64,000 bases of DNA, from positions 8,804,001-8,868,000 of the forward strand of contig NC_079171.1 of NCBI RefSeq assembly GCF_947568905.1, written 5' to 3'. A model generated the notes under the pieces. That model was not told the origin of the DNA and did not search any database. It was given only the letters and a program-made list of their open reading frames with translations. Shown here in pieces: positions 7,028 through 59,216 of this stretch (position 1 is its first letter; each line of letters begins with the position of its first letter). The position numbers and the translations under genes were made by a program. The stretch is from Ostrea edulis (lineage: Eukaryota).

Positions 7028-7162
7028 ATGACAACGTCGACCATCGACTCTTCATTTACAGATGCAAACATAATGTGTTCCATTTGTTTCGAAAAAGAAG
7101 TTGAACTGCGAGGTTACGACAAATTCGTCGAATTTGAAATGAAACCGAAAGTTGATTTGTAA
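7028..7162 (+). other. uORF (44 aa) homologous to the TRIM N-terminus
   Basis: MTTSTIDSSFTDANIMCSICFEKEVELRGYDKFVEFEMKPKVDL*. The first 23 aa align to MATSLDSSSMEDVTLCSICFEK. It stops 7 nt before the main ATG. Confidence 0.7.
7141..7152 (+). promoter_or_regulatory. IRF-E/ISRE-like element GAAACCGAAAGT
   Basis: Exact match to the IRF-E consensus GAAA(G/C)(T/C)GAAA(G/C)(T/C), 17 nt before the ATG; conserved in all five paralogues. Confidence 0.6.
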
Positions 7163-7169
7163 TATAAAG

Positions 7170-9031
7170 ATGGCAACATCACTAGACAGCTCTTCGATGG
7201 AGGATGTTACATTGTGTTCTATATGTTTCGAAAAGTTCAAGTCGCCGAGGTTTTTACCGTGTACACATTCTTTCTGTCACGGGTGTTTATCGTCCTACAT
7301 CGTGAGCTTGTGTAAATCTACGGAGACTCGTTTAGGATTTAATTGTCCATTATGCCGTGAGTATACGCCCAGTCCTGGCGCCTTCGATGAGCCAGACGAG
7401 TGGGCGGGGCTTTTTCCTGTGAATGCAATGTTGAGGAAAATTTTAGACAAATCAGACCAATTGCTTTGTGAGCCATGCTTGAGAGAAAAAGAAGAAGAGG
7501 AGGCCTCGGACTACTGCTTTTCATGTTTAGAACATTTATGCAAAATGTGTACGAAGTACCACAGGAAGAATTTGTCGTCACGAGACCACAAAGTATCTCC
7601 ATTGAATGAACTGAAATCGGCGAACAGAAGATCCATTGTTGATATCTCAAACAGCTGTGCCACGCATAAGGATGAAAAAGTTAGGTTATATTGCTTTGAT
7701 AACGAACAGTCCTGTTGCGCAATGTGTGGTGGCATGGAACATAGGAAATGTGAGCAGTTTGATACTATTGAAAATGTTGTACGTGTTTTTAAGGAAAGCG
7801 GCAAGGTTGACTCCATTATGGATGATGTAAACAAGTGTAAAAGTAAATTAGAAAATGCCAAAAACGAAGAAGAGAAGAACATAACGAAAATTCGGTTGAT
7901 GAAATGATAGCAAGATCGGAAGAGGATTTTAAAACTCTCCTTGACCACTTGCAGAAATTGCAACAGGAACATATAGAAGAAATATCCAGTTCTCTGAAGA
8001 AAAGCAAGGAAAAATTGTAAACATGCATAGGCACCTTAACGGACGGAATACAATGTGCAGAGTATTGCAGCAAAATGTTTGAGCAAGCCAGAATCAGTGA
8101 AAATGAAACGGACTTCATGATGAAGTTTCATACGTCAAAAATAACGTACGAACATTTAAAACACGTGAATTTTTCACGAAAGCGCATCATGATTTCCCCA
8201 AAAAAAGATCCTATTTTGACGGAAATCGTGGATATGACAGCTCTTTCTGACGTTCACCATACTGAATCCTCTCGTCAACTTTATTTTGATGTTCGAACTG
8301 TAGAAATGTCTTTGATAAAGGAATTTAGCATTGATGGGGATGTCGTGTGCGATGGTATATTTCTGTCTAATGGCACTTTTGTGATAGCGGATTACAGAGA
8401 TGATGGGAAATGCATGTTTTTTGACAAACATTGGGTCCCCAGTATATTTGGTGAAAGTCTTAAGAAACCATTTGGTTTGATAGAAAACGATGAAGAAGTT
8501 CTTGTGACTTGTAGCGGCTCAAAAAGTATTGAAGTATTTTCTTCATCAGATTTACAGAAACTTCGAAGTATTCCCATGACTGAATCAGTTTCTGGAATAA
8601 CACACCGGAGGGGTGACATATATGTTGCGTGTGGAAAGAAAATCATTAAAATCGATAGCGTGGGTAGGATATTGAAAATATACGATGTAGAAGGGGCAAA
8701 TAATGTAAATATACTTGCAACAAACACTGGACTTATTGTGTACAGTGATTGGAAAATAGAAAAAGTGACAGCGATAACCGATCAGGGAGACATTGTCTGG
8801 AAGTATAAAAATCGTAACCTGAAATGTCCATCTGGAATCGATCAAGACTCTGTCGGTAACATATACGTTACAGGAAGAGATAGCAACAACGTCCACGTGT
8901 TGTCTGGAACCGGGGAACTTATTAGGGTGTTCGAAGACATCCCGAGCCCGACCTTCTTTAAATTAATTGAAGAGAGGGGCATTATATGTGCTTTTGATAT
9001 ATCAAAACGCATAAGAGTGTTTGAAGTTTAA
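7170..9031 (+). pseudogene. TRIM-1: RING-Bbox-Bbox-coiled coil-NHL-like TRIM E3 ligase pseudogene
   Basis: C3HC4 RING (CSIC..CTHSFCHGC..CPLC), two B-boxes and a propeller (LSNGTFVIAD, PSGIDQDSVGNIYVTG). Frameshift near 7889 (apparent 7-nt deletion versus the paralogue IENSVDE) and an in-frame TAA at 8018-8020. ATG 7170 is taken from paralogue alignment. Confidence 0.92.
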
Positions 9032-9077
9032 GTTTCCCAGGAACATGACATTACATTGATTCTGAACAACAACAGTC

Positions 9078-9142
9078 CTATTGTATATTGTATTCCTTAT
9101 AGGAGTTACGAGATTGATCGCTGTTTGTTATCTTCACCTTTC
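9078..9142 (+). mobile_element. Naiad-like retroelement 3' tail fragment
   Basis: 'ttgtattccttataggagttacgagattgatcgctgtttgttatcttcacctt' matches the family tail. Confidence 0.65.
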
Positions 9143-10523
9143 CTATAAAATGTTAGCTGCGCTAATGCAGCCCTCTCCGATTCTTTCTTTCTTTCTTTTT
9201 GAGGGGGCTACAACTCCTTAGGATTTCCGTAATGGTGCAAATGCGAGAGTGATTCACTCCCGCAACATTTTTGATCATTTTAAACATTTGCTGACTTCCT
9301 TTACGTAATTGAAATTATATTCTCTATTTCTTAGTCGATATATGAATTTACAACCTGCAACTTTTCGATGTATTCCAATTTCTTGATTCATATTTGTGTG
9401 CCATCTTTGATGTACTGAAGTTTCAACTTCCAGTTGTCAAATTATTTGCATATGCCATATAAGGTAGTGTTTACATCAATGGACGAGCACGGAGGTGAAA
9501 GCGATTTCGTCGGTATTAAAATATCAAGTTAAAAATCAACAGCAGAGTGTACGTTTTTCGGCCACCACATGATTTGTCCTTTTTTGTCGGAATGACTCAA
9601 GTAACTACATTTTCGCGCTGATTGTCAATGTTGAGGTTTTTCAGTAGATTTACTGACGAGATCTCGCGATAATAAGAATGGCATAGCAAACCAAGAATCT
9701 TGAATGTTGTAAATATATTTCATTAAAAACACCTTTCTCAAACAATAATCAATCAATCATTCAAACATGCCCAAGCACAAAGTCGGTAGTATTTAGTGTG
9801 TAAACAACAGCATTGGATACAAATACAAGGATTTTATTAAAGGTTATTCATTAAAAAAATATTGGCATCATTACGAAGATCTCGTGGACTTCTACCCCTA
9901 TCCTGAAAACGTCTGAATAAAAAAGGAGAGGATTAGATTATTGCAGCATATAAAATGTCAAACAATCTATTTAAAACATTCGTTGCTCATCAAAAACACT
10001 CAGGACATAGCGAATCAAAGTTGATATTGATAGAAATAAAAACATGTGAATTTGATATTAATCTTTTTTCCCGATTTAACCTTTTCAGAATGATTATCAG
10101 GCCCTTCCCTAACCTGTAAAATATGTAATTAAAGTGAATAAAGTATATCTTGACTGTATGTCATTTAACATTCAAAGGTAATTTTATGAAATTAGTCGTC
10201 ACTATTTCTTGGTATCTATTTTTCGCCGAAATATTAACAATTCGTAGTTAGCCATTTACGAAATTTGTCCCTGCATTATGTTTAAGCCCGGACTAAGAAT
10301 GCAAGTTTTATCACTCGTGTATATACTTAGTTTTGCTCAGTCGGAAATATACGATAGAACAATCATATAGACGAAAAGTGACACTGCTTGCTATGAAAAA
10401 TACCATCAAGCCCATGACTCTTGTCCGTTCATACCGTGTTAGAGTTGAAATATCACATCAGAACAAAACGCACGCCATACAAGTGTAAATCAGATGTTCG
10501 TTATCTCCATTTGTTCATTCTTT

Positions 10524-10592
10524 TTAATTAACAACTACAATTAATTAACAACTACAATTAATTAACAACTACAATTAATTAACAACTACAAT
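10524..10592. repeat. 17-bp tandem repeat (ttaattaacaactacaa) x4
   Basis: Four near-perfect copies about 130 nt past the TRIM-2 stop codon. Confidence 0.95.
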
Positions 10593-10720: not shown

Positions 10721-12625
10721 TTATTTGAATTGGTACACTTTGATGTGTTTTCGATTGCTACACACGCAACATGTATTTCTCGCTTTGTTTATTTTCATAA
10801 AGTCTGGTCTCGGAATGTCCTCAAAAAGTCGAATTAATTTGCCTTCACCGGACAACACATGGACATTGTCACTGGATTTACCAGCGACATAGATATTACC
10901 ATCAGAGTCCGTATCAAGGCCACACGGAGATTTAAGATGTGGACTGTCGTATGTCCACGCGGTTTGACCTCCATCTGTAATCGCTGTTACGACGTGTTTT
11001 TTTCTGTTACTGTATATAATGTGGTTTTTCGTGGCGACGATGTGCTTCACGCCAGTCTCTACACTGTACTCTTTCATTAATCTTTCATACTCGTTTATCT
11101 TCACGATTTTGTCATTGCATGCACAGTATAAGTAAGCATCCTTCTTTGCTATTCCAAAGTTTTTGTGAAGACTGGTGAATATCATATTTGATGATTTGGA
11201 ATAAGAGTAAAGTGATACCCTTTCAATGGATCTTGAACCGTGGCATGCCACTAATAATTCTCGTGCCTTTTCACACAGACCGAAAGGTTCTGAAGACAAG
11301 TCAATGGATCTTGTGCACGCAAACACTTTGTTATAAAAGAAGCATTTACCATTGTTGCTCCTTTTACAACCCCGCCTTTTTGTCGACAGCCATGATAGAA
11401 CGAACTCTCCATTTGATAAAAACGTACCATCACGTACGCAGCCTGCATCAATGCTAAAATGATTTAATAAAGATAACTCAACTCTTCTCAGATCAGACTT
11501 GACATCAAATAGGGACTCTGAAAATACTGCATCAGGAAAACTTTCAAGATCCATGATATCTTCCAAAATAGGATCCTTTCCTTCCTTAAGCCCTATGCGT
11601 ATTTGTGTAAATTCGTAATTTTTGAGTTGTTCAAATATTTTTCTGCTTTTATAGTACTTCACAACCATATCGATGTCATCCTGACTTTTTCTACAATCCT
11701 CAATATTTCTGTAACAGTAATCTGTGCATTGAATTCCATCTGATAGCGTGTCTATGCATTTTTCGTATTTTTCTTTATTTCTCTTTACAGCGGTAGCCAT
11801 TTTTGTTAGATACTCATTTTGCAGATGCTGCAAGTGATCGATAGCAACCCGAAATTCTCTCGTGGTATTCTCTGTAATCTGGTCTGCTTTATCATCCATT
11901 TCTGTAACGAACCTTTCTTGTTCCTTCTTTGCATCTACTAATTTGTTTTCAAGAATATGTATGTCTTCAGACAGGCTGTCGAAATTATGACTAAGAATCT
12001 CTCTGAGAGTCTCAGCAGTTTTCTTTATAGCATCAACACTTTCACATTTTCTGTGTTCCGTACTGACACACATTGCGCAGCATGGCTCTTCGTGATCGTT
12101 GCAAAATAGCTCTAGTTTTCTATCCTGATGTGTTGAACACATATTTTCTCTACCAATTCTCGGTGTAATATTCATTCCTTTCATTTTATTCACTGGTACT
12201 GTCTTATGGTCAAGTGTTGTTAGACTTCTTTTATGATATTTTGTACACAATTTGCACAAATATTCCATGCAAAAGAAACAAAAATCGGTTGCATACTCTA
12301 CTTCGCTCTGTCGTAAGCAAGCCTCGCATTGTGTTTGTTCTGATTCCTGTAAAAGTTTTCCTAATACTTCGTTTTCAGGGAAAAGTTCTGCCCACTTCTC
12401 TGGCTCACCCAAGGCATTATCAATGGGAATGTACTCACGGCATAATGGACAATTAAATCCCAAACGAGGCTCCGTAGATTTACACACATTATCAATGTAG
12501 GAAGATAAACACTTGTGACAGAAGGAATGTGTACACGGTAAAAACCTCGGCGACTTGAACTTTTCGATACATATCGAACAAAATGTAACATCCTCCGTTG
12601 TAGAGCTGTCTAGTGAAGTTGCCAT
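10721..12625 (-). CDS. TRIM-2: intact RING-Bbox-Bbox-coiled coil-NHL-like TRIM E3 ligase (634 aa), inverted relative to paralogues
   Basis: Uninterrupted ORF from ATG 12625 (MATSLDSS...). RING, B-box1 (CEAC..CFFCMEYLCKLC..H..H), B-box2 (CSTH..CNDH..CAMC..HRKC), coiled coil, and NHL-like repeats (SPCGLDTDSDGNIYVAG). Confidence 0.95.
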   Translation of the reverse strand: MATSLDSSTTEDVTFCSICIEKFKSPRFLPCTHSFCHKCLSSYIDNVCKSTEPRLGFNCPLCREYIPIDNALGEPEKWAELFPENEVLGKLLQESEQTQCEACLRQSEVEYATDFCFFCMEYLCKLCTKYHKRSLTTLDHKTVPVNKMKGMNITPRIGRENMCSTHQDRKLELFCNDHEEPCCAMCVSTEHRKCESVDAIKKTAETLREILSHNFDSLSEDIHILENKLVDAKKEQERFVTEMDDKADQITENTTREFRVAIDHLQHLQNEYLTKMATAVKRNKEKYEKCIDTLSDGIQCTDYCYRNIEDCRKSQDDIDMVVKYYKSRKIFEQLKNYEFTQIRIGLKEGKDPILEDIMDLESFPDAVFSESLFDVKSDLRRVELSLLNHFSIDAGCVRDGTFLSNGEFVLSWLSTKRRGCKRSNNGKCFFYNKVFACTRSIDLSSEPFGLCEKARELLVACHGSRSIERVSLYSYSKSSNMIFTSLHKNFGIAKKDAYLYCACNDKIVKINEYERLMKEYSVETGVKHIVATKNHIIYSNRKKHVVTAITDGGQTAWTYDSPHLKSPCGLDTDSDGNIYVAGKSSDNVHVLSGEGKLIRLFEDIPRPDFMKINKARNTCCVCSNRKHIKVYQFK

Positions 12626-12642
12626 TTTTCTATCACAATTCA

Positions 12643-12654
12643 ACTTTCGCTTTC
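12643..12654 (-). promoter_or_regulatory. IRF-E/ISRE-like element GAAAGCGAAAGT
   Basis: Exact IRF-E match on the minus strand, 17 nt before the TRIM-2 ATG. Confidence 0.6.
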
Positions 12655-12663
12655 AGTTCGAAT

Positions 12664-12762
12664 TCAGCGTACCCGTTTTAGCCTCGGCGTTATAAATTTT
12701 CCGAAACAAATGGAACACCCCGTGATGTCTGTAAATGAAGTATCGATTGTAGACGTTGTCAT
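12664..12762 (-). other. uORF (32 aa): truncated duplicate of the TRIM N-terminus
   Basis: MTTSTIDTSFTDITGCSICFGKFITPRLKRVR* aligns without gaps to MATSLDSSTTEDVTFCSICIEKFKSPRF (13/28 identical, hand count). Confidence 0.8.
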
Positions 12763-12945
12763 TGCTGACAAGAAAATAAACCATAAATTCACTGCCCTTG
12801 TATATTAAGAGTCTAATGCACCGTCCTTCCCATGAGAATCATTGGACAAAACGTGCATTCACACTGATAAAAGTGCAACGAGTTATAAAACAAGTATGTT
12901 ACGTAGATCTCTGCCCGGAAGTATAGTATTCGGGAACATGGAAGC

Positions 12946-12990
12946 CTATGTCGGACATAAGTAATTTAGATAGGAGATTAAAGGTTTAAA
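12946..12990 (-). promoter_or_regulatory. Predicted 3' splice site of the TRIM-2 5'UTR intron
   Basis: Minus strand ttatgtccgacatAG|gcttccatg is homologous to the acceptor motif of the other paralogues. Confidence 0.55.
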
Positions 12991-21680: not shown

Positions 21681-21811
21681 AAGGACCTTTTCTAAACTGG
21701 GTTTCTACAGGTATATCAGCTGTTAAGAAGTTTTATATTAAATCCAAACTGTTGATAACCAACACACATAGCATACACTGTTAGTAAACATCGCCCTGTA
21801 TGAAAGCAAAT

Positions 21812-22107
21812 CACTCCACAGAACACATAGCATGCACAGCAGACGGGGTATATGTACCCACCACGGAGGGAACTCCTGCTAAATACAGTACATGCTGTGT
21901 AGACAGGGGAATATATATATATACTCCACAGAGGGGACCCCCACTAAATACAGTACATGCTGTGTAGACAGGGGAATATATATATATATACTCCACAGAG
22001 GGGACCCCCACTAAATACAGTACATGCTGTGTAGACAGGGGGATATATATATATATACACTCCACGGAGGAGACTCCCACTAAATACAGTACATGCTGTG
22101 TAGACAT

Positions 22108-22161
<54 letters not shown>

Positions 22162-22270
22162 TCCACGGAGGGGACTCCCTTTAAATACTGTACATGCTGT
22201 GTAGACAAAGAGATATATACACTCCACGGAGGGGACTCCCACTAAATGCAGTACATGCTTTGTGGACAGA
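21812..22270. repeat. ~68-bp minisatellite with variable (TA)n, ~7 copies
   Basis: Unit 'actccacggaggggactcccactaaatacagtacatgctgtgtagacagggga(ta)n'; one copy carries about 25 TA units. Confidence 0.95.
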
Positions 22271-22359
22271 TATGTGTGTGTACACTGAATGTTTGGAAGT
22301 AATATTCGCAAAACAAATGTGGATTTTCATCATATATAAAATAGCTTGTTCATGATCCT

Positions 22360-32261: not shown

Positions 32262-32879
32262 ATTAAAATTGGTAACATATACGTTTTACATTTGCAACAA
32301 TATACAAAATACTTTGAATAATAAGTAATCAAACCAAAAAATGAAATGGTCAACATTTCATTTTTTGAGATAAACAGCAACTGTTGTTTTTGTTTTTTTT
32401 ATCAACAACATTTACTGTCAAAAAATCCCTAAACTATAAACTTATATTCGATTCATAATAATGCATTGACGTTGGAAAACTAAAACATTAATCGTGATAT
32501 ATTTTCCATATATGTATGCATGCAAAAAAACAACAACAAACAACTGAATTAATGGCCTTGTGGGTTTATTTTAACTCAGGCAAATCAAATAGTTTCAAAT
32601 GGTTTAAAACGTAACGGGCCTACCACAATACTATACCAACCATTCGACATTGAATATGTTTAACGATTTTCTGCTTCAATACAATACGCAGATTTAAATG
32701 TCCAAGTCAGCCGTTGAATGTACGAGTCAGTCCTCCTCGCAAAACTTCAATAATTACTGTTGAGGCCTGGATATTTAAATTATATCTACATTCGCCACCG
32801 TTTACTATTAGAAAGCGCCGATATTTCGAAACCTGCATGTTGATCAAACGTTAATATTTCTGATCTCAGAAGAAGAACA

Positions 32880-32954
32880 CCTTAACTTTCACTCACGTAT
32901 CGATAGATTGAAGCAGAGACTGTTTTTATTTCATTTACTCTTGCCTCACATAGG
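32880..32954 (+). promoter_or_regulatory. Predicted branch point and 3' splice site for TRIM-3
   Basis: accttaac ... tttttatttcatttactcttgcctcacatAG|g (AG at 32952-32953), with a strong polypyrimidine tract. Confidence 0.65.
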
Positions 32955-33180
32955 CTTCCATGTTCATGACACTATGCTTTCTATTAAGGGTCTACGCCAC
33001 AGTCTTGTCCCGTGACCCGTGGTACAGTGTGAATGAAAGTTTTCTCCCATAATCTCTTTCCACAGGAAGGACAGTGAAATTATTAGTTTGGTATGTGCTT
33101 GACAATAGTTCATTTATAGACATTACGGTGTGTTCCATTTGTTTTCGAAAATTTAGACGCCGATTCGCCGGATTTGAAAT

Positions 33181-33192
33181 GAAAACGAAAGT
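33181..33192 (+). promoter_or_regulatory. ISRE-like element GAAAACGAAAGT
   Basis: GAAANNGAAAGT, 19 nt before the ATG. Confidence 0.55.
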
Positions 33193-33211
33193 TGATTTGT
33201 CATTTATAAAC

Positions 33212-35086
33212 ATGGCAACATCCTTAGACAGGTCTTCGATGAAGGATGTTACATTGTGTTCTATATGTTTCGAAAAGTTCAAGTCCCCGAGGTTTTTACC
33301 GTGTACACATTCCTTCTGTCACGGTTGTTTATCTTCCTACATTGTTAATGTGTGTAAATCTACAGAGTTTCGTTTGGGATTTAATTGTCCATTATGCCGC
33401 GAGTACATACCCTGTCCTGGTGCATTCGATACGCCAGATGCGTGGGCGGGGCTATTTCCGTTGAATGAAGTTTTAGAGACAATCGTTAAGAAACCTGATG
33501 GGAAATTGTGTGATGCCTGTTTACGAGAAAACGAAAGTGAAAATGCTATCGGGTTTTGCTTGTCTTGTACTGAATATTTATGCAAGGTGTGTACCAAATA
33601 TCACAAAAGGCAATTGCTCTCAAGAGATCATACCATATGTCAACTAAACGAGATGAAATCTGGCAACATATTTCCCGAATCAGGGAATATCCATAGCTGC
33701 CCAAAACATAAAAGGGAAACTGTCAAATTCTTCTGTAATGATCACCAGCAGTCCTGTTGTTCAGTGTGTATAGGAATAAGTCACAGAAAATGCGAAAGTA
33801 TTGATACTGTTGAAGATGCAGCAAAAAATATAAAACAAAATCGCCAACTGGATGTTCTTTTAGGTGATATGAAGAACGTGGAAAAGAAACTGACAAAAGC
33901 AAAGAGCGAACAAGAGATATATGTAGCAGAAATAGAGAATTCAGTGGACGAAATCATAGAGAAAACAGAAAGGGAATTCAAGGAACTTGTTGATCACCTA
34001 GACATACTGAAGAACAAACATTTAGATGAGGTAGCAGATGCGCTGAAGAAAGGAAGGGGGAAGTTAAGTGAATGTACAAATGTACTTACTAATGGTATAC
34101 AGTGTACAAATTACTGCTGCCGGAATATTGAAAGAGTTAAAGAGACGGAGAATGACGCTGAAATGGTGATGACGTATTACAGAGTGAAAGAGAGGCTCTT
34201 ACAGCTGAAACGGTTTAAATGCACGAAGAAACAGATAACGATATCTGAAAAAAAGTCACAAGTTTTGAAAGAAATGAGAAATATGGAATCTTTTGGAGAT
34301 GTTGAATATGCTGAGTCTGATCGTCGCATCACGTACGATGTAAATGACATTGCGTTATCTTTAGTTAATGAATTCAGCATTGATGGAGAAAATCCGATTG
34401 TGTGGACTGGGGATTTTCTGTCCAATGGTAACTTTGTATTTGCAGATTACATACCTGATGGACGTTGTTTTATTTATAACAAAGACTGGAAACCCACGGA
34501 AGTCATTGATGGACTGAGTTACCCTTTTGAAGCAATACAAGCTGGAGAAGAACTACTGGTGACGTGTGATGGAACGAAGTCTATAGAAGTTTTTTCTTTG
34601 TCTGATTTACAGAAACTGCGAAGTATCAAAATCAACGAAACAATGTATGGAATAACACAACACAATGGAATTTGTTATGTAGCATGTGGAAATAAGATTA
34701 TAAAATTCAATCTGTCTGGTAAAAAACTTAGAGAATATAAAGTCGAAGGCAATTACAATATTCACATAAGTACAACAAAAGATGGACATATTGTGTACAG
34801 TAACTGTTCCCTGAATAGAGTAACCGCCATCACGGACCAGGGAGACACCGTGTGGCAGTATAAACATATCAAAATGAGAGTACCCCGTGGACTTGATGTA
34901 GACTTTGTCGGTAATATCTTTGTTGCCGCTAGAGGAAGTGACAATATCCACGTGTTGTCTGGCGCTGGCTGTCTCGTTAGGATTATCGAGGATATTCCAC
35001 AGCCAATGTTTATTAAACTAATGGAAGAGAGGAGTATATGTTGTGTGTGTAGCAATCGTAGAATCATGAAAGTGTATAAATTGTAG
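33212..35086 (+). CDS. TRIM-3: intact RING-Bbox-Bbox-coiled coil-NHL-like TRIM E3 ligase (624 aa)
   Basis: Uninterrupted ORF from ATG 33212 with all zinc ligands present. An in-frame ATG at 33179 could add MKTKVDLSFIN. AATAAA lies about 20 nt after the stop. Confidence 0.95.
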   Translation: MATSLDRSSMKDVTLCSICFEKFKSPRFLPCTHSFCHGCLSSYIVNVCKSTEFRLGFNCPLCREYIPCPGAFDTPDAWAGLFPLNEVLETIVKKPDGKLCDACLRENESENAIGFCLSCTEYLCKVCTKYHKRQLLSRDHTICQLNEMKSGNIFPESGNIHSCPKHKRETVKFFCNDHQQSCCSVCIGISHRKCESIDTVEDAAKNIKQNRQLDVLLGDMKNVEKKLTKAKSEQEIYVAEIENSVDEIIEKTEREFKELVDHLDILKNKHLDEVADALKKGRGKLSECTNVLTNGIQCTNYCCRNIERVKETENDAEMVMTYYRVKERLLQLKRFKCTKKQITISEKKSQVLKEMRNMESFGDVEYAESDRRITYDVNDIALSLVNEFSIDGENPIVWTGDFLSNGNFVFADYIPDGRCFIYNKDWKPTEVIDGLSYPFEAIQAGEELLVTCDGTKSIEVFSLSDLQKLRSIKINETMYGITQHNGICYVACGNKIIKFNLSGKKLREYKVEGNYNIHISTTKDGHIVYSNCSLNRVTAITDQGDTVWQYKHIKMRVPRGLDVDFVGNIFVAARGSDNIHVLSGAGCLVRIIEDIPQPMFIKLMEERSICCVCSNRRIMKVYKL

Positions 35087-44523: not shown

Positions 44524-44888
44524 AGTGTTGCGAACATTATAGACCCCAACGTACAGGGAGGACAGTATCACTATTTAATTATCTAGAATTCAAACATTTA
44601 GATAGATCTATACTCGGCCTTAAATTGTCTCAATCTTAAAAAAAAATCCCTTTATAAGATAGACATATTATATTCCAGTAATAGATAAACATTGAAAAAT
44701 ATAGATGTTTACATATTTGATAGAATTCAAACCTTAACAAATTCAAATTACACTTATTTATGTCCCGCATAGGTTTCCATGTCCCTAGAAATTGTCCCGT
44801 TTCTACACGCCGAGGTTGGCTTCGGATATTTTACACTCTGGATCTACAAGGAGGACAGTGAAATATATGCTTTATGTGCTTGTTGGCA

Positions 44889-44936
44889 ATGACAATGTGT
44901 ACAATCGACACTTCATCTACAAACACCACAGTGTAA
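44889..44936 (+). other. uORF (15 aa) MTMCTIDTSSTNTTV*
   Basis: Homologous start and position to the uORFs of TRIM-1, TRIM-2 and TRIM-5. Confidence 0.6.
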
Positions 44937-44996
44937 TATTCCATGGTTTAAAAAAATAGAACGCCGAGGTTAAAGCGGGTTCGCCGAATTTGAAAT

Positions 44997-45008
44997 GAAA
45001 CCGAAAGT
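44997..45008 (+). promoter_or_regulatory. IRF-E/ISRE-like element GAAACCGAAAGT
   Basis: Exact IRF-E match, 17 nt before the ATG. Confidence 0.6.
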
Positions 45009-45025
45009 TGATTTGTAATATAAAG

Positions 45026-46898
45026 ATGGCAACATCACTAGATAGTTCTTCGATGGAGGATGTTACATTGTGTTCTATATGTTTCGAAAAGTTCAAGTCG
45101 CCGAGGTTTTTACCGTGTACACATTCCTTCTGTCAAGGTTGTTTATCTTCCTACATTGTTAATGTGTGTAAATCTACGGAGCCTCGTTTGGGATTTAATT
45201 GTCCATTATGCCGCGAGTACATACCCTGTCCTGGAGCCTTCGATAAGTCAGACGAGTGGGCGGGGCTATTTCCGTTGAATGAAGTTTTAGAGGCAATCGT
45301 TCATAAGCCTGATGAGAAACTGTGTGATCCCTGTTTGCGAGATAACGAAAATGAAAATGCTACGGGGATATGTTTGTCATGTACTGAATATCTATGTAAA
45401 ATATGCACGAAACATCACAAAAGACAACTGCTCTTAAAAGACCATATCGTATGTCAATTGAACGAGATGAAATCCGGTAACGTAATTCCCTCATCAGGAA
45501 ATACCCACGGTTGCCCTGAACTTAAAAAAGAAACAATCAAATTCTTCTGTAACGATCACCAGCAGTCCTGCTGTTCGTTGTGTATTGGAACAAGTCACAG
45601 AAAATGGGAAAGTATTGATACTGTCGAAGTTGCGGCAAAACATTTAAAAGAAAATGGCCAACCGGATGTACTTTTTGGTGATGTGAAGAACCTGGAAAAG
45701 AAACTGACAAAAGCAAAGAGCGAGCAAGAGAAGAATGTAGCAGAAATAGAGAACTCAGTGGACGAAATCATAGAGGAAACAGAAAAGGAATTCAAAGAAC
45801 TTGTTGATCACTTAGAAATGCTGAAGAACAGACATTTAGATGAAGTAGCAGGTGCGCTGAAGAAAGGAAGGGGGGGAGTTGGGTGATTGTACAAATGTAC
45901 TTACTGATGGTATACAGTGTACAAAATACTGCTGCCGGAATATTGAAAGAGCTAAAGAGCCAGAGAATGACGCTGAAATGTTAACTACTTATTACAGAGT
46001 GAAAGAGAGGCTCTTACAGCTTCAACAGTTTAAATTCACGAAGAAACAGATAACGATATCTGAAAGAAAGTCACAAGTTCTGAAAGAAGTGAGAAATATG
46101 GAATCTTTTGGAGATATTGAATATGCTGAGTCTGATTTTCGCATCACATACGATGTACATGACATTGCGTTATCTTTAGTTTCTGAATTCAGCATTGATG
46201 GAGGAAATCCGAATGTGTGGACTGGGAATTTTCTGTCGAATGGTAACTTTGTAGTTGCAAATTGCAAATCTAATGACACTTGTTTTATTTATAACAAAGA
46301 CTGGAAATCCACGGAAGTCATTGATGGACTGAGTACCCCTTTTAAAGCAATAAAAGCCGGAGAGGAACTACTGGTGACGTGTTCTGGAACGAAATCTATT
46401 GAAGTTTATTCTGCGTCTGATTTACATAAACTGCGAAGTATCAATATAAACGAATATGTGTATGGAATAACAAAACACAATGGAGCGTGTTATGTAGCAT
46501 GTGGAAATAAAATCATAAAAATTGATATGTCCGGTAAAAAACTGAAAGAATATAAAGTTGAATGGGGTACTATTAACATAAGTACAACACAACATGGACA
46601 CCTTGTGTACAGTAACCATCCCCGTAATAGAGTAACCGCAATCACTGATCAGGGAGACACCGTCTGGCAGTATACACATCTGAAAATGATAGAACCCCAT
46701 GGACTTGATGTAGGCTATATCGGTAATATCTTTGTTGCCGCTAGAGGAAGTGACAATATCCACGTGTTGTCTGGCGCTGGCAGTCTCATTAGGATTATCG
46801 AGGATATTCCACAGCCAGTGTTTATTAAACTAATGGAGGAGAGGAGTATGTGTTGTGTGTGCAGTGGTTGTAAAATCATGAAAGTGTATAAACTGTAG
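45026..46898 (+). pseudogene. TRIM-4: frameshifted TRIM-NHL paralogue (probable pseudogene)
   Basis: A 7-G run at 45870-45876 where 6 G would keep the frame. B-box2 zinc ligands are also changed (CPEH>CPEL, HRKC>HRKW). Otherwise very similar to TRIM-5. Confidence 0.8.
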
Positions 46899-50837: not shown

Positions 50838-53550
50838 TTGGGGTTCTTTTTGAAGTATGCATGGAAAGTAAATGAATGACATCGTTGAATGACGTCGCGA
50901 TTATTTAATTGTAACATTGTTTGTTAAAAACTGCTGCTTTGATGGATTTCTTCTCTTTTTAAAATCAAACTTTGGTATCATTTTTTTTATAAAACGAACT
51001 CGACACCCCCCCCCCCCCCCCAAGGCAAAAAAAAAATCGCTTTGATACTAATATTAACAAAATTAACAGCACCCAAATTCTGCCTATTTTAAGTTGAATC
51101 ATGCAATGAATTATCAATGAATTATCAATCACTTATGTTCTATATAATTCAATGGAAAACAGTGCCATTGCCGTTAAAACAATGGTATGTTGAAACCGGA
51201 ATTACTAAAAAAAAAAAAGCTGTGCTGTTGAATGAAAAACAATTTTCACAGAATTGCATATACATTGTCAAGATACATCGGTCCAATTTTCAGGTGGGGT
51301 TTTCGAGTGAGTAAAAAAGGTCTAAACCCACGACCTACGTTAAATCGCCAGGTTTTGATTGATACAAAAACAAGTAAGTAAATCAGCATTCAAGGAGAAT
51401 GGAAATACAAAAACTGGTTATCATCTCACTGTATTGCGTTGCTTGCACGTTGACGATGCGGTGTTAAAATAGGATTTTTCTGTTCACAAACTTCTCAATA
51501 TCACAAAGCTGTAAAAAGGCGTCAGGAACATTTTTCTTGTCTCCAAATATTATGGGCGGCACTAAACGCCGCTATGGTGCCGTATTGGAGTAGTAACATG
51601 TTAAAGAGTCAATATCTGCAGTGATATACAATATTCGTTTTCAAAATTTTAACATCTTTGAAACAAGAGCTATCATAATATACGTAGGTGTACAAGTTGA
51701 TACGACGAAAACTATTGATAAAGCGTCCAGGAACGAGGCGGCGGATTGAACTAATAACATATAACTTTTAAAGGAGTCCTTGTATGTCTTTATTTGGTAA
51801 TCAAATAATCCATTTTTGGACCAAGGACTATCAGTTTGGGTGATGTAATGAAGAACAAATGAGGGGATGTTGTGCTGAAATACAGTGCAGTCCTATAATA
51901 ATTCACATGTATGGTCTGAAATATTCATTCTTGTGTCCATGTTGATTGGCTCATCTTGTGGCTACACAGTATTTACGACATTGGTACATTTTACATGCCT
52001 TGATGTATGAATTCATAGAAAACAATCTACGCGCTTTAAAGACCAGGGGCGCGTTTTACAATAGAAATTACGACTTACGACAAAACTTTACATACTGGAA
52101 TTTTCAGGTTTATTGTCAGGTCATTCACTCCAACTGAAAAATTTTTTTTTCTAAATGTTGAAAATTAAGCCTCAGAAAAGTTTTACTTCATTCACTTAAA
52201 GTAATAAATGTGTAATACAATTTAAGACTTGCGACTTTGCCGTAAGTTGATTTGTAAAACGTAGCACAGAATAGTGGATCTATCGTACGGATATACAAAT
52301 CTATATTTGTAACGTGCAAGGTCTCCCGTGACACGGACCTCCGTTTTAAGGTCATGTCGGAGAGATCCGTGGTCCTTCTAAATGCAGAACGTTTTGGGAA
52401 AGAGCAGGCATCATCTATGTTTACGTCTTGGGCTTGACTTCCCGGTTACGAAGTGAAAGCTCTACCACTGAGCTACTGCGACCGGTATCAAATCGATTTT
52501 CTCATAAGATACACAATATTACTTTAAAAACTATATTACATAGAATGTCTTAGATATATATTGATCAATCAAATTCATCAGGAAATTCAGAAAACCCGTG
52601 CTTGCGTCTCATACTTCCTTCGCGTTTCACAAATGGGTCTAGAGTGTTGAAATTGATAAAATTGTGTACGAATTACATGTGAAAGGTGATATAAAGGGCT
52701 ATGTATTTATCAAAAATCATGCTATCGGGATATAGGTACTATCTTTCAAACAAATGAAGTAGGCAAAGACATGAAATGACAGAGAAGACGAGTTTGAATC
52801 AGCGACTTCAACACTGTAGACCCACCCGTGACACGTGAAGTGTACGGGTACCGGTTTCTGAAATTCGGTGACAAATTTGATTGATCAAGATGTATGTACG
52901 ATAATGTTTGCAATATGATTTTTGCAGAATTATTTTATATCTCATTGCCAATGTGTATTTAGAGGGATCTACGGAATGAGAATTCAGAATCGGATATGAA
53001 GCATGTGAAGTCTAAGTGTTGTACAAGTAATCATATCTAATCCCAACAAGGGGAATGTATTACAAATCTCAGTACATTACTCACACTTGAACACCAAATC
53101 AAGGTGAGGGGAGGGGGGCTAACAATAATAGGGGAGACAATGCCTAATGTGTTTTCCGTTACAGGTGTCCGAATCGATTGCCAGTGTTTCAGACATAATG
53201 ACCTCCTCAAGGGTGTCACAGTAGACATTAGTAAGATGAAGGCGACTCGCCCCTACTGTCATGGATATCTTGTTTGGCATTGTAAAGACGTCAAACTATA
53301 TTACCGAAGTCATCTTCACAAGTCAACGGTTATTGATTCGTTACCTCGCATAACAGGGGCTTAGCGCGTTTCTGGGCCCGAATACAATAAACGGTATCAC
53401 AAGAGTTTAGGCCCAAATCGGGCTTAGCCTCTATGCTTCGCACTAACCCTTGACATCAGTCGCTATATAAAAGTTGGGCTCATTTAGATCATTACACAAC
53501 CCACTATAGATAAAACATCCAATGAATTCATTGCATCTTGTTATGGTATA
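50838..53550. repeat. Segmental duplication block B (paralogous to 1-2795)
   Basis: Collinear with block A; the match ends exactly where the Gypsy LTR begins (53551). Confidence 0.93.
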
Positions 53551-53616
53551 TGTAATGTACTTTGTCAAAGCCGTGCCATGTTTGTCTCAGTACTTTATTC
53601 CTTGGTTTTGAGGAGC

Positions 53617-55189
53617 ATCCTAGATCTTTTCCTTTGACATAAACAAGACGAAACTCATACGGTTGTAGTTTCAACATCATCTTCTGAATACGCATTGGTG
53701 CAGATGTCATTGGTTTGGGCATGATAGTTTCTAGCGGTTTATGATCAGATTCAATTGTAATATTGGTTTTACCGTACCAAAGTTTATGGAATTTCTCACA
53801 TCCACAAACGACTGCAAGTAATTCCTTTTCGATCTGGACGTAACGCTGCTCTGCAGGGGTCAGGGCTCTAGAGGCATACGCAACAACTCCCTTCTGCTGA
53901 AGAACAGCGGCACCTAGTCCCTTCATAGATGCATCCACACTGAGAATTACTGGTTGGCTGATGTCAAAGTATCTAAGAACTTTAGTTGAAGTAAGTGCTG
54001 TTTTCACATTCTCGAATGATTGTTCTGCTTCCGAAGTCCAATTCCAATCATCACTGGTCTTCAGAACTCTGAGAGGTGCGTTCAACTCACTCAGATTAGG
54101 AATGAACTTAGCAACATACGCTAGCATTCCAAGTACTGTTTCCAATTCTGCATGATTTTCTGGCGCTCTCATCTCGGTGATTGCTCTAATACGTTCCGGA
54201 GTAGGTTTTAGTCCTTCACCTGTCAATAAATGGCCTACATAGTTCACTTCACTTTTAGCTAGAACACACTTGCTTTTGTTAAGTTTCAAGTTAATGGCCT
54301 TAACCCGTTCAAGTACAGTTCGCAACCGACTGTTGTGTTCCCCTTCATCACGACCATGTACCAGAATACCGTCCATAACAACTTCAACACCATCTATGTT
54401 TCCAAAGTGATTGATCATTTCACGCTGAAATACTTCTGCTGCACATTTCAGTCCCATCGGCATGCGAAAATAACGGTAACGTCTGAAAAGATAGCTTAAT
54501 CTGGAAGTAGCCCATGTTTGCGTCCAAAGTTGAAAATATCTGGCTTCCATGAACTCGGGTGACTATATCGTCTATAGTGTTCATAGGGAAATGCTCACGC
54601 AGCAGAGCTCTGTTCAAGTCAGTAGGGTTTAAACAGATCCTTACGCGTCCATTCTTCTTGCGCACACATACCATGCTGCCAACCCAACTGGTTGGTTCTG
54701 TCACTGTTGCAATGATGTTACATTTAACTAAGTGGTCAAGTTCTTTTTTCACATCGTCTCGCATTGCAACTGGTAATGATCTTGGTGCATGAACAACAGG
54801 TTCCACAGAGTTGTCTACCTTGATATCATATTCTCCTGGTAAACAACCAACACCGTCTCCCACTACGTCTGAGAATTCTTGAAGGAGTTCGCTGACAGAC
54901 AAACTAACACTGTTCACTATTTTCACTCGTGTAATGAGACCAAAATGCAAACAATCTGGTCTCCCTAGTAGACTGATGTGTTTGGGTGTGTCCATAATCT
55001 TGAATGTTAAGTTGCGAAACAGAGTTTTGTACCTACAGGGCAATGTTATTTCACCGTGCACTTTTGTAGGGTTGCCACACACATCATGGATAACAGTACT
55101 GCTCACACGAATTACAAAAAAACTGAAGTGAGTCATTGAGCTATCGATTTTGAAATAATGTTGCATCTGGGTCCACTGTCAATTTCTAA
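53617..55189 (-). pseudogene. Gypsy pol remnant (protease, RT, RNase H), disrupted
   Basis: Protease LEIDSGPRCNII read in frame after the TAA at 55190. RT motifs RICLNPTDLN, FSTLDANMGYFQI, RMPMGL, with YxDD mutated to VMDG. RNase H motifs VDASMKGLG, EKELLA, SDHKPL. Frameshifts at ~55140 and ~54500. Confidence 0.88.
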
Positions 55190-56269
55190 TTACAGTGGTA
55201 ATCCTTGTACATCAACAGTAACAGTCCATTCACTGTCATCACTCGAGGCAACATGTACTGTTTCATATGAGTTCTCCATGAATGCTGTATAACACTGCTG
55301 AACCATGCTCTGATCAAAAATGTCACATACATCCTCCCCTTGTTCTTGACAGTCTGAATAATGAACATGGCGCTTTGAATGTTTGTTAGTTCCGCGTCCA
55401 CGACGTGATTGTCCTCTGTGTTGTTGAGAATATTGCGAGTGACCTTTACACAGTGGTGAGGCTTTGTAATGTCCTTGTATGCCACACTCGTTGCATGTTT
55501 TGTTGAAGGCTGGGCATTGACGAAAAGCATGATGCTTAGTGCATTTCTTACAGTACGGGTGTTTCCCTTGATATCCAGGTCCGGGTTTCTGCTTCGACTT
55601 GGATGAACCAGCATTATTCACTGTCGGACTTTCAGTAAGAGTGTCAACATGTGCTTTGGTTAGCTCTACTTGCCTACATGTTTGTATGACCTTGGCTAGT
55701 GTCAAATCAATAGCAGGAATTTCCATAAGTTTTTCTGTACACTTACGGTCATTAACCCCATTAATGATCATGTCACAAATAAAGCCTTCGCGTTGATCGC
55801 CATACTCACAGAATTCAGCCTTCTTCTTCAGTTCAGAAATGAAGTCCATTATGGTTTTATTTCCACGCTTTCTGTTCAAGAATTCTTGCCGTTTAATGTT
55901 TCTCTAATTGTGCACACCATAATGTCTATCAAACTTGCGAAATACAGTTGTCAAATCGTGTCTGTCCTCGACCGGAACTGCTTCGATGCCTTCTCCCGGA
56001 TCAGCTTCAACTTCCGGTGCCCATGTAAACGAATCATAAATCTTTATAGCCTCACGTCCCATGTTAGCAAGTAATACTCCTACCCTGCGTTTTCCAGGTT
56101 TGTCATCAAGACCAAGCGCGTCGAGATGAATCAAGAATGACCGTTGGTAGGCATCCCATTCCTGAGCTGTCGTGTTTGGGTCACTGGGGTTAAATTCAGG
56201 CAAAATTCTGAGCAAATGTGTTGACATGGCGTCCTTGTCTTTCGATAGAAAATGTCCCAAGAGTTTCAA
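55190..56269 (-). pseudogene. Gypsy gag (frameshifted) with CCHC-type knuckles
   Basis: ..EWDAYQRSFLIHLDALG..LLANMGREAIKIYDSFTW; ELKKKAEFCEYG..DMIING; CKKC..H..C and CNEC..GH..C. Confidence 0.85.
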
Positions 56270-56549: not shown

Positions 56550-57151
56550 TAGTTTAGGTCCCCTACACGTTTGTCAATCCAGTGTTCTACGAGACAAACG
56601 CCTAGGAGCATTCTACGATAAACATTTACACTCCATAACAAGGCTTATCCAAATTCTGATAAAGCAGCTGATTGGTTGATGCATAACGATGACGGACGCA
56701 GTCGAACAGAAGATAAACAAAGTTTTATCGAATTCTCGCTGAAACCTTTACAGAAAGTGTGTTTACTTAAATTAGCAAATAGGTCAGACGTGTTGGCAGT
56801 ATTACCAACAGGCTATGGGAAATCGCTATTGTATACGATTCTACCGCAATTAATGCTTGAAGAAGACCTGCATAGTAATACAAGTTCTCGTGAAGTCAAC
56901 ATAATTCCGGTCATATCGCCACTGGTTTCTCTAATGAAGAACCAAGTTTCGAACTTGCAAAAACACAACGTTTGCTTTCTTGAGAACAAGCGACTCATAA
57001 ACTGACATTTGGAACAACAGCTGTGGTGTTTGTTTTCTTCGGTGTCACCATTTCCGTTTTTCGATAGCGCCCCCTCGCGTTGTAATATTTTCAAATAGAA
57101 CGCTCCAAGGCGTTTGATTAGGAAGTCAAACGCCTTGCGTTACCTAGGCTA
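56550..57151 (+). mobile_element. Deletion derivative carrying a RecQ-type helicase N-terminus (AcademH-like)
   Basis: ORF 56676-57005 has motif I LPTGYGKS and motif Ia VISPLVSLMKNQV. Ends TAG...CTA with degenerate inverted similarity (tag..taggt..cgtttg). No TSD found. Confidence 0.55.
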
Positions 57152-57230
57152 ATGTCATAGTTTTGTCCCGTTTCTGGAGACATTTTCAGTGTGACTATAT
57201 TCTGCACATTGATGTCAGTGGCGGATTTAA

Positions 57231-57750
57231 AGGGACTGATTCACGATTTTCTCCAAAATTTCATTTTTCACTTTTAATGATCAAAATCTACTGTATAATA
57301 TGTTTAAAAGATTTTACATAAAAAGTAAAGTTATACATCATCACAGAAGCCCATTTTAGAGAGTTCATTATTTGTTTTGTAAACAAAGATATCGGTATGT
57401 TACTGTTTACGAAATTTTCAAAAGAAATAGATATCGATCTAAGTTTATTATAACTTTCACATTTCAAGCATTCTTCGGATGAAATGTTTCATCTAAAAGT
57501 TAAAATGTGCGACTATGCAATATCAAGATGCTTTATATTACAACATTGATATTTCACATGTTTGTTTGTATACATAAAAAGACTCGAGTCTTTGTTTATA
57601 TAACGCATATTTAAGGCTAAAATATAGCTTTTATTCTTGCAATCCGAAGGTTAAAATTTTGGTTGTCAACATTAAATGAGTTATACTTTTAATATTAAAC
57701 ATCAAAAATAAAAAAAAAATAATTTGTTCAAAAGTCGTGAACCAGTCCCT
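57231..57750. mobile_element. TTAA-targeting (Kolobok-like) MITE, 520 bp
   Basis: TIR agggactg(a/g)ttcacga with TTAA duplicated; the empty site ggatttaagggcgg is seen at ~44077. Confidence 0.9.
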
Positions 57751-57940
57751 TTAAGGGCGGACCCCCTCCCCCCTCTTATTTTTTTTTCAAATTTAAGGTA
57801 AATCGTATTTAGAAAAATGTAAACGATAAAAGAAGTAGTAGTTTCTTCCACTCTTGGGGGAATAAATGACAAAATCTTTTGATTCACTGAATTACTTTCA
57901 ATGGGAGAATTTACGTTATTTTTCTGCCACAAACCCTTAA

Positions 57941-58528
57941 AGCTGTATGGTCCAAATTACAATATTTTTTCCATCTCGTAAAAACGCTATTAAATCATCC
58001 CACACATGTAGTTATGAGGCTGTATGACATGTCATAAATTATTTCACCTGTTTTAACCCAAATTATTTGATTTTAAATCGATCTTTACAAATAACCGTGT
58101 CACTCTGCCATTTCAAGTGACAGTCACGTGACCAGTTCAAACTTTCAGATCATCGGTGGTCTTATCTGTGCAAAGCTGTGCAACAGTACCGTACCATAAG
58201 TATAATAAAAATAAAAACATCAAATACCTCTTAGTAATTCGTTGTTTTACGCTCTTTCAGCCTTAAAACTAGACAGTTGCGTATGAGTTAATACATCATG
58301 TTGGGATTCCCCTGACGCACGTGCATCTATTTATAGACGTCTATTATGGGATGATTTATATATGTACCCACTAAATTTACTTTCTAAATAATATTCGCAC
58401 TGGTTTTTTTTACATGCAGATGTTTTCAAGCATGTAATTAAGGGAAAGTTAATAACTTTATAAAAGAATTAATCTGCTTTAAAGCAATTATGTACAAAAA
58501 TAATACATGAACATCGGGTCATACAGCT
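57941..58528. mobile_element. TTAA-targeting (Kolobok-like) MITE, 588 bp
   Basis: TIR agctgtatg..cc with TTAA duplicated; the empty site aaacccttaatgttagcg is seen at ~44270. Confidence 0.9.
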
Positions 58529-59168
58529 TTAAAATTAGCGCAATTTTATTAACTTTACCTTATTAGATGTAAAAATGACAGAAAATAGTAGAAATTACTA
58601 CATAGGAGATATATTTCAAACCTTATAAAATTTGTAAAATCAAGCCGGGACCTCACGCGGGCTTCGCCCCCTGGACTTCCATCAGGGCTTTGTCCTTGAC
58701 CCACTGATGGCCTCATGGCGGCCCGAAGCCTCATAAAAAAGTTGCGCCCTCCTAACCGGAATTCCTGGATCCGCCACTAAATGTTGCGAAGATTCTACAA
58801 GGAGGACAATATCACTATTTAATTGTTATTTCTAGTGTTTATATTTAACAGGATCCAAACCTTTAGATAGACTATACTCCGCCTTAAATGGACTCAATCT
58901 TGAAAAAAATCCTTTATAAGATAGAAATATATCCGAGTAATAGATAAACATTGAAAAATATATATGTTTACATGCTCAATATTTGATAGAATTCAAACCT
59001 TAACAAAATCAAATTGCACTTATTTATGTCCCGCATAGGTTTCCATGTCCTTACAAACTACGTCATAATCTTGTCCCGTTTCTACACCCCGAGGTTAGCT
59101 GCGGATATTTTACACTCTATATCAAGAAGGAGGACAGTGAAATGTTTCCTTTATGTGCTTGTTGGCAA

Positions 59169-59216
59169 TGACAACGTGGACAATCAACACTTCATCTACA
59201 GACATCACAGTTTAAT
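59169..59216 (+). other. uORF (15 aa) MTTWTINTSSTDITV*
   Basis: Homologous to the uORFs of TRIM-1, TRIM-2 and TRIM-4; coordinates approximate. Confidence 0.55.

What the first reader, a model, noticed from the sequence alone, without database searches (positions are those of the whole stretch)
7028..59216. Each 5' leader holds a fossil duplicate of the gene's own N-terminus, kept as a uORF (half-RING peptide)
Seen: before TRIM-2 a 32-aa uORF MTTSTIDTSFTDITGCSICFGKFITPRL... aligns without gaps to the real start MATSLDSSTTEDVTFCSICIEKFKSPRF (13/28 identical, including the first CxxC). TRIM-1 has a 44-aa version retaining CSICFEK. TRIM-4 and TRIM-5 have 15-aa versions. In TRIM-3 the uATG segment is deleted but DITVCSICF remains. 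The uATG is conserved in 4 of 5 genes, all these uORFs stop before the main ATG, and they lie downstream of the predicted splice acceptor, so should be in the mRNA. Inference: an ancestral ~140-bp tandem duplication of the 5' end was co-opted as a translational brake or micropeptide. I know of no description of this for TRIM clusters.
Basis: partly seen in the sequence, partly recalled or inferred. Interest (0 to 1): 0.8.

Follow-up and report, generated by a model that had tools for sequence, protein, structure and literature searches.

The report
Decaying duplicate start before oyster TRIM genes
Each gene in this flat-oyster TRIM cluster has, about 140 bases upstream, a worn copy of its own first 28 codons; the copy is a real leftover of an old small duplication, but it mutates like unconstrained DNA, so nothing here shows it is kept as a regulatory reading frame or small peptide.

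Summary
The window is Ostrea edulis chromosome OX387711.1 and holds five intronless TRIM45-like genes. Each has a degenerate copy of its coding bases 1-84 about 140 bp upstream. The uORFs have the stated lengths: 44, 32, 15 and 15 aa, and none in TRIM-3.

The interpretation, "kept as a uORF / half-RING peptide", is not supported. I aligned 14 paralogues, five from the window and nine from the same chromosome.
- The fossil uATG survives in 7 and was destroyed by four independent events.
- Changes are spread evenly over the three codon positions of the fossil (24/33/29). The real RING start shows 9/8/39.
- The fossil changes at 1.07 per column, faster than RING third positions (0.65), and it carries many indels.
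- uATG density in the leaders equals the composition expectation (49 observed, 50 expected).

The fossil is shared by otherwise deeply diverged genes because a cassette from about -360 to +190 has been homogenised among them. No fossil is detectable before the Saccostrea or Crassostrea homologues sampled.

No RNA data could be obtained, so whether the fossil is transcribed is unknown. The only invariant leader block is ISRE-like, which hints at promoter DNA.

Other first readers of this scan noted the same feature in neighbouring windows of this genome.

The parts
7028..7113 (+). TRIM-1 fossil copy of coding bases 1-84. The uORF runs 7028-7162 (44 aa) and reads on through the linker.
7170..9031 (+). 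TRIM-1 coding region. It is frameshifted in the reference by a 7-bp deletion at 7884 relative to its intact paralogue L023.
12682..12762 (-). TRIM-2 fossil copy. The uORF runs 12762 down to 12664 (32 aa) and is the best preserved copy in the window.
10721..12625 (-). TRIM-2 coding region, intact (634 aa): RING and B-box, with a downstream region that Pfam was not run on separately and that the whole-protein scan left unassigned.
33104..33157 (+). TRIM-3 fossil remnant. A 22-nt deletion removed the uATG. The remnant is in frame with the main ORF but has no ATG of its own.
33212..35086 (+). TRIM-3 coding region, intact (624 aa). The upstream ATG at 33179 is in frame because the mini-uORF stop is lost.
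44889..44969 (+). TRIM-4 fossil copy. The uORF runs 44889-44936 (15 aa), and the CxxC part is destroyed by indels and substitutions.
45026..46898 (+). TRIM-4 coding region, frameshifted by one extra G near 45870 relative to TRIM-5.
59168..59249 (+). TRIM-5 fossil copy. The uORF runs 59168-59215 (15 aa).
59308..61182 (+). TRIM-5 coding region, intact (624 aa). The gene call on record for this locus covers only its last 477 aa.
7140..7155 (+). Invariant ISRE-like block TGAAANCGAAAGTTGA in the linker. It also lies at 12640-12655 (minus strand), 33180-33195, 44996-45011 and 59276-59291. It overlaps the ATG at -31/-33 of a 7-codon mini-uORF (MKPKVDL).
58948..59498 (+). Approximate extent in TRIM-5 of the homogenised 5' cassette, about -360 to +190: promoter-like block, fossil, linker and the first ~60 RING codons. 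The same span relative to each main ATG applies to the other four genes.

Best explanation
The upstream 'half-RING' is a pseudo-start. A short duplication copied at least coding bases 1-84 of an ancestral Ostrea TRIM45-like gene to a position about 140 bp upstream. The copy had no function as coding sequence and has been decaying since.

It sits before every paralogue for two reasons. First, the family expanded after the duplication. Second, a 5' cassette from about -360 to +190 (promoter-like block, fossil, linker, first ~60 RING codons) has been exchanged among copies, most likely by gene conversion. This exchange carried the fossil into genes whose bodies are deeply diverged.

The ATG-to-stop frames are incidental products of this decay.

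Shown: the duplication, its decay pattern and the cassette homogenisation. Inferred: gene conversion as the mechanism, and neutrality of the relic.
For: Duplication is real: DNA z = 4.4-8.9 in five copies; peptide score 56-72 against a null of about 20 +/- 4.

Decay:
- Fossil uATG present in 7 of 14 paralogues.
- It was lost four times independently: one 22-nt deletion shared by T3, L002b, L012 and L024a; ATG>ATT in L010; a separate deletion in L011; ATG>AGG in L024b.
- Parsimony changes by fossil codon position are 24/33/29. With TRIM-4 and TRIM-5 left out they are 19/24/21, p = 0.74. The real first 60 codons give 9/8/33, p = 6e-6.
- Changes per column: fossil 1.07, linker 0.63, RING positions 1/2/3 0.15/0.13/0.65. 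There are nine gap patterns in the fossil and none in the RING.
- uORF lengths differ: 15, 15, 32, 34, 34, 44 and 44 aa.
- uATG count in the last 175 nt of the 14 leaders is 49, against 50.0 expected from composition.

Cassette:
- TRIM-2 and TRIM-5 are 87-97% identical over bases 0-180, then 53-58% beyond +240.
- Fourfold-site divergence of TRIM-2 from the others is 0.55-0.69 in the gene body and 0.09-0.25 in the RING.

Lineage: no fossil is detectable before the Saccostrea cucullata or Crassostrea gigas homologues sampled.
Against: No RNA evidence either way was obtained, so a sequence-independent role for upstream ATGs cannot be excluded.

Every leader keeps at least two uATGs. Loss of the fossil uATG could therefore be compensated by others, as described for uORF turnover in Drosophila (PMC13019311).

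Paralogues are not orthologues. Loss in some copies could reflect divergence in regulation rather than neutrality.

RING third positions may be somewhat constrained or homogenised, so they are an imperfect neutral yardstick.

The 5' and 3' limits of the duplicated unit are not resolved. Flank homology is not significant.
Confidence: 0.75

Rival explanations
1. The leader is transcribed, and its upstream ATGs act together as a peptide-independent translational brake. This set includes the fossil ATG where present, ATGs at about -155 to -165, and the 7-codon frame at -31/-33. Individual ATGs turn over while the total load is kept.
For: All 14 leaders have 2-6 uATGs in the last 175 nt. The ATG at -31/-33 has an A at -3 and is present in 13 of 14 copies. 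L010 lost the fossil ATG but reads the same frame from an ATG at -154. Compensated gain and loss of uATGs is documented in Drosophila (PMC13019311).
Against: The uATG count equals the composition expectation, 49 against 50, so there is neither enrichment nor depletion. The -31/-33 ATG overlaps an invariant ISRE-like DNA block whose invariant part excludes the A of the ATG; TRIM-2 has CTG there. That conservation is therefore explained without translation. No transcript evidence is available.
Confidence: 0.12
2. The fossil encodes a functional half-RING micropeptide, for example a decoy for the E2 or for RING dimerisation.
For: Several copies keep the first Cys-x-x-Cys: CSIC in T1, T2 and the T3 type; CSLC in L002a; CSNC in L022; CSTC in L010.
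Against: There is no purifying selection on the frame: codon-position changes are flat. The ATG is lost in 7 of 14 copies. The frame stops after 15 codons, before the Cys pair, in TRIM-4 and TRIM-5. The second Cys is lost in L023 (TGT>TCT, read from the alignment). The C-terminal tails differ between copies. One Cys pair cannot bind zinc as a RING does (established knowledge of the C3HC4 fold).
Confidence: 0.02
3. The fossil lies upstream of the transcription start and is part of the promoter. It is never in the mRNA, so the uORF question does not arise. Any residual conservation would reflect promoter spacing or transcription-factor sites.
For: The only invariant stretch of the leader is TGAAANCGAAAGTTGA at -30 to -15, which contains an ISRE-type core GAAANNGAAAGT. 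It occurs 5 times in the window against 0.05 expected by chance. The C. gigas homologue carries AAACCGAAAGT in the opposite orientation at -46 to -36; a site that works in either orientation fits a DNA element. The leaders show no ATG depletion. Gene calls on record for two intact paralogues, TRIM-5 and L024a, cover only the last 477 aa.
Against: The ISRE reading rests on a consensus match only. Such sites can also lie downstream of a start site. RefSeq proteins P0063 (635 aa, 11 residues longer than the 624-aa type) and P0008, whose sequence I read, begin at the -33 ATG, although that may be a purely predicted start.
Confidence: 0.1

Closest known systems
Relics of partial tandem gene duplication (pseudo-exons or pseudo-starts)
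   Same: A same-strand, adjacent, truncated copy of a coding segment. It shows significant residual similarity to its parent, indels, a lost start codon and no codon-position bias.
   Different: It covers only about 84 coding bases. It has also been multiplied across at least 14 paralogues by family expansion and by exchange of the 5' cassette.
Conserved-peptide uORFs and regulatory uORFs (for example the GCN4/ATF4 type)
   Same: ATG-to-stop frames lie upstream of, and end before, the main ATG, in the same orientation.
   Different: The uATG is not conserved (7 of 14). The peptide is not under purifying selection. Length and frame vary. Neither transcription nor ribosome occupancy is shown.
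uORF birth-death turnover (Drosophila, PMC13019311)
   Same: Gain and loss of upstream ATGs between related leaders, with possible compensation.
   Different: Here one uATG arose in a single step by duplication of the true start. There is no expression or translation data to show any effect.
Concerted evolution of 5' segments in tandem immune-gene families (gene conversion)
   Same: There is a sharp switch from about 90-97% to about 55% identity at a fixed point (+190 to +240). Synonymous divergence in the cassette is three to five times lower than in the gene body.
   Different: Conversion tracts were not mapped individually. Strong selection on the DNA sequence of the RING cannot be fully excluded.

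Membership tests
Functional regulatory uORF | Lies in the mature mRNA 5' leader | not testable with these tools
   No run on record as RNA holds the locus. The four runs laid also cover the intergenic DNA and so are DNA runs.
Functional regulatory uORF | uATG conserved beyond the neutral expectation | tested here: not met
   Present in 7 of 14 paralogues, with four independent losses. At the fossil rate of 1.07 changes per column, about 3 substitutions are expected in the three ATG columns; 2 substitutions plus 2 deletions were observed.
Functional regulatory uORF | Ribosome occupancy or an effect on main-ORF translation | not testable with these tools
   No Ribo-seq or reporter data.
Conserved-peptide uORF / micropeptide | Purifying selection on the encoded peptide (excess of third-position changes, conserved length) | tested here: not met
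   Codon-position changes are 24/33/29 and 19/24/21 (p = 0.74), against 9/8/33 in the real start. Lengths range from 15 to 44 aa.
Partial tandem duplication relic | Significant similarity to the adjacent parent segment, on the same strand | tested here: met
Partial tandem duplication relic | Neutral-type decay (indels, start loss, rate at or above the synonymous proxy) | tested here: met
Partial tandem duplication relic | Both flanks of the repeat unit recognisable (true head-to-tail unit) | tested here: inconclusive
   The 60 nt before the uATG do not match the 60 nt before the main ATG above chance. The linker does not match coding bases 78-220. The unit's borders have been erased.
TRIM (RING / B-box / coiled-coil) E3 ligase genes | N-terminal C3HC4 RING followed by a B-box | tested here: met
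   PF00097 and PF00643 score above their cut-offs in TRIM-2, -3 and -5. RefSeq names close paralogues TRIM45-like.
TRIM-NHL subgroup | C-terminal NHL repeats (PF01436) | tested here: not met
   No NHL hit. The only hit above its cut-off is PF22701 Mala_s_1-like (29 bits, cut-off 27.5); other beta-propeller hits are weak. A propeller is likely, but NHL membership is not shown.

The most novel reading that the evidence does not exclude
The leader is transcribed, and the duplication of the true start delivered in one step a ready-made upstream ATG. Together with the other uATGs, it damps translation of an interferon-type-inducible TRIM array. The uATG load, rather than any single uATG, would be what is maintained across paralogues.
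Probability: 0.1. Interest if true: 0.45.

Novelty: new member of a known kind. Interest (0 to 1): 0.2.

Why it matters
The result is mainly a caution. In young, homogenised tandem gene families, a motif present "in 4 of 5 genes" says little about selection, because the copies share recent ancestry and exchange their 5' ends.

The relic is useful as a marker. It dates a small duplication to the Ostrea lineage, before the expansion of this TRIM45-like family. It also traces the spread of a promoter-plus-RING cassette into genes with old, diverged bodies.

If transcript mapping ever shows the fossil inside the mRNA, the array would offer natural variants for testing uORF effects: with the uATG, without it, and with truncated frames.

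Tried and rejected
1. RNA evidence. Two run searches found no run on record as RNA. The single read-laying run showed that X3, X4, X5 and X7 are DNA, because their contigs also cover the intergenic stretch 9607-10553.

2. T1 polymorphism. I first read a +7-bp insertion at 7884 in those runs as a polymorphism that restores TRIM-1. It is not. All the differing letters coincide with the paralogue L023, so the contigs are L023-like.

3. Leaders in other data. A metagenome scan with a linker-plus-start pattern gave nine chance hits, none from an oyster.

4. Transcript-derived contigs. An exact-protein look-up of TRIM-5 found nothing. Cluster members of ten paralogues are all NCBI genome models.

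5. A third, older copy further upstream (-360 to -181). It is not significant. The best case is TRIM-1, z = 2.1, reached by 25 of 400 shuffles.

6. Homology of the flanks of the duplicated unit. Not significant.

7. Literature. Four searches found no description of a uORF made by duplication of the main start, and none of such a feature in bivalve TRIM clusters. One general paper on uORF turnover was used.

8. Splice acceptor. The conserved CAG is absent from three intact or near-intact paralogues, so it cannot be confirmed.
Full report
**What the window is.** Protein searches place the window in Ostrea edulis, assembly GCA_947568905.1, chromosome OX387711.1. By my arithmetic from the locus range, it covers about 8,804,001-8,868,000. 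It holds five single-exon genes encoding a RING, a B-box and a C-terminal region with only weak beta-propeller matches. RefSeq names close paralogues "TRIM45-like". The main ATGs lie at 7170 (+), 12625 (-), 33212 (+), 45026 (+) and 59308 (+). TRIM-1 and TRIM-4 are frameshifted in the reference. There are no N runs in the window.

- Upstream ATGs at 7028, 12762, 44889 and 59168 open frames of 44, 32, 15 and 15 codons. All end before the main ATG.
- TRIM-3 lacks the ATG but keeps DITVCSICF.
- The TRIM-2 peptide matches the true N-terminus at 13 of 28 positions without gaps. Its BLOSUM62 score is 65, against 20.7 +/- 4.4 for shuffles.
- At DNA level the upstream copy matches coding bases about 38-84 with z = 8.5, 4.4 and 6.4 in TRIM-1, -2 and -3, and z = 6.7 and 8.9 in two further paralogues.
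- The TRIM-4 and TRIM-5 copies are too decayed to be significant alone. They are recognised through alignment with the other leaders.
- The similarity covers the segment from the ATG to +84. Neither the 60 nt before the two ATGs nor the linker against coding bases 78-220 match above chance. The borders of the duplicated unit are therefore lost. A third, older copy further upstream is not supported.

**Is it kept?** I fetched nine more 5' ends of the same family from the same chromosome and aligned all 14.
- The fossil uATG is present in 7: T1, T2, T4, T5, L002a, L022 and L023.
- It has been destroyed by four independent events: a 22-nt deletion shared by T3, L002b, L012 and L024a; ATG>ATT in L010; a separate deletion in L011; and ATG>AGG in L024b.
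- Where the ATG survives, the frames are 15, 15, 32, 34, 34, 44 and 44 codons, with different tails.
- On a tree of the 5' cassette, parsimony changes in the fossil fall evenly on its three codon positions: 24/33/29. Without TRIM-4 and TRIM-5, whose alignment is uncertain, they are 19/24/21, p = 0.74. The first 60 real codons show 9/8/33, p = 6e-6.
- Per column, the fossil changes 1.07 times, the linker 0.63 times, and RING positions 1/2/3 change 0.15/0.13/0.65 times. The fossil carries nine distinct gap patterns and the RING none.
- About three substitutions would be expected in the three ATG columns at the fossil's own rate. Two substitutions and two deletions are seen.
- The number of ATG triplets in the last 175 nt of the 14 leaders is 49, against 50.0 expected from base composition.

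Nothing in these figures distinguishes the fossil from unconstrained DNA.

**Why divergent genes share it.** TRIM-1 and TRIM-2 differ from the TRIM-3/4/5 group at 51-69% of fourfold sites in the gene body, but at only 9-32% in the first 60 codons. TRIM-2 against TRIM-5 is 87-97% identical from 0 to +180, then 53-58% beyond +240. The leaders remain alignable back to about -360. The 3' flanks are only about 52% alike.

A 5' cassette made of the promoter-like block, fossil, linker and first RING half is therefore much younger than the gene bodies. The simplest cause is gene conversion or another ectopic exchange. This explains "conserved in 4 of 5" without selection on the uORF.

**Age.** No fossil is detectable before two Saccostrea cucullata homologues or a Crassostrea gigas homologue. 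Their upstream regions do not align with the Ostrea leaders. The duplication is thus specific to the Ostrea lineage, or at least to this subfamily. Complete decay elsewhere cannot be excluded.

**Transcription.** This premise could not be tested. No run on record as RNA holds the locus. The runs laid proved to be DNA. Over TRIM-1 they carry the letters of the paralogue L023 rather than those of TRIM-1. The predicted acceptor (the CAG in GGACAGTGAAAT) is missing in L002a, L022 and L024b.

The only invariant stretch of the leader is TGAAANCGAAAGTTGA at -30 to -15. It contains an ISRE-type core and occurs five times in the window, against 0.05 expected by chance. The 7-codon frame starting at -31/-33 (MKPKVDL) overlaps this block, but the A of its ATG is not part of the invariant core. 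The C. gigas homologue has AAACCGAAAGT inverted at -46 to -36. It raises the possibility that the fossil lies upstream of the transcription start.

Against that, RefSeq proteins P0063 and P0008 begin at the -33 ATG. That may be only a predicted start.

**Verdict.** The fossil is a real relic of a small 5' duplication, spread by family expansion and cassette exchange, and decaying like neutral sequence. The micropeptide reading is contradicted by the substitution pattern. A peptide-independent brake by the sum of uATGs remains possible but unsupported. uORF turnover with compensation is known from Drosophila (PMC13019311).

I found no description of such a relic in TRIM clusters, but the kind of feature is ordinary. 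Two neighbouring windows of this genome were flagged for the same thing (s1-279381, s1-302031).

Noticed in passing
window 6810-7360, 12435-12985, 32852-33402, 44666-45216, 58948-59498: A 5' cassette (about -360 to +190 relative to each main ATG) is far more alike between paralogues than the gene bodies. Identity switches sharply at about +190 to +240, and fourfold sites in the first 60 codons are three to five times less diverged than in the body. Gene conversion of promoter plus RING is the likely cause.
   Followed up: yes
window 7140-7155, 12640-12655 (-), 33180-33195, 44996-45011, 59276-59291; L004 961-971: An invariant block TGAAANCGAAAGTTGA with an ISRE-type core lies 15-30 nt before every main ATG. 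The C. gigas homologue has AAACCGAAAGT inverted at -46 to -36. This is a candidate IRF-responsive promoter element.
   Followed up: partly
window 7884 and 45870: TRIM-1 carries a 7-bp deletion relative to its intact paralogue L023 (94% identical, about 180 kb away). TRIM-4 has one extra G relative to TRIM-5. Two of the five genes are therefore disrupted in the reference.
   Followed up: partly
window 7335-8406: In four DNA runs, the contigs laid on TRIM-1 carry only the letters of paralogue L023 and none of TRIM-1's own. The TRIM-1 copy may be absent from, or unassembled in, those individuals (copy-number variation).
   Followed up: partly
window 59749-61182; L024 9560-11434: The gene calls on record give only the last 477 aa (start at Met148, no RING) for paralogues whose 624-aa frame is intact in the genome. 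This is probably an annotation artefact of the near-identical 5' cassette, but an internal start site is not excluded.
   Followed up: partly
window 33179-33211; L012 10001-10033; L024 about 9527-9559: In the T3-type copies the stop of the 7-codon mini-uORF is lost (TAA>TCA). The -33 ATG is therefore in frame and would add 11 residues (MKTKVDLSFIN/K) to the protein. P0008 starts there, and P0063's length fits the same start.
   Followed up: partly
window 53528-55879 (-): A broken retrotransposon fragment. One frame carries reverse transcriptase and RNase H domains (Pfam E = 2e-27). Two adjacent frames have no Pfam match, one of them with zinc-knuckle-like Cys/His spacing. The frames are interrupted.
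   Followed up: partly
window 9080-9680: The stretch between TRIM-1 and TRIM-2 has summed contig depths of 10^4 to 10^6 in the DNA runs, with many joints and loose ends. It is a very high-copy dispersed or satellite repeat.
   Followed up: no
window 21811-22311 (-): A long open frame made of TA-rich microsatellite and a short tandem unit (repeated 'YIYIYI' translation). This is simple-repeat DNA, not a gene.
   Followed up: no
window 6959-6985: In TRIM-1, the stretch from about -211 to -185 resembles coding bases 33-55 (22 of 26 aligned columns identical, including a 4-nt gap). It is reached by 25 of 400 shuffles, so it is either chance or the last trace of a still older copy.
   Followed up: partly
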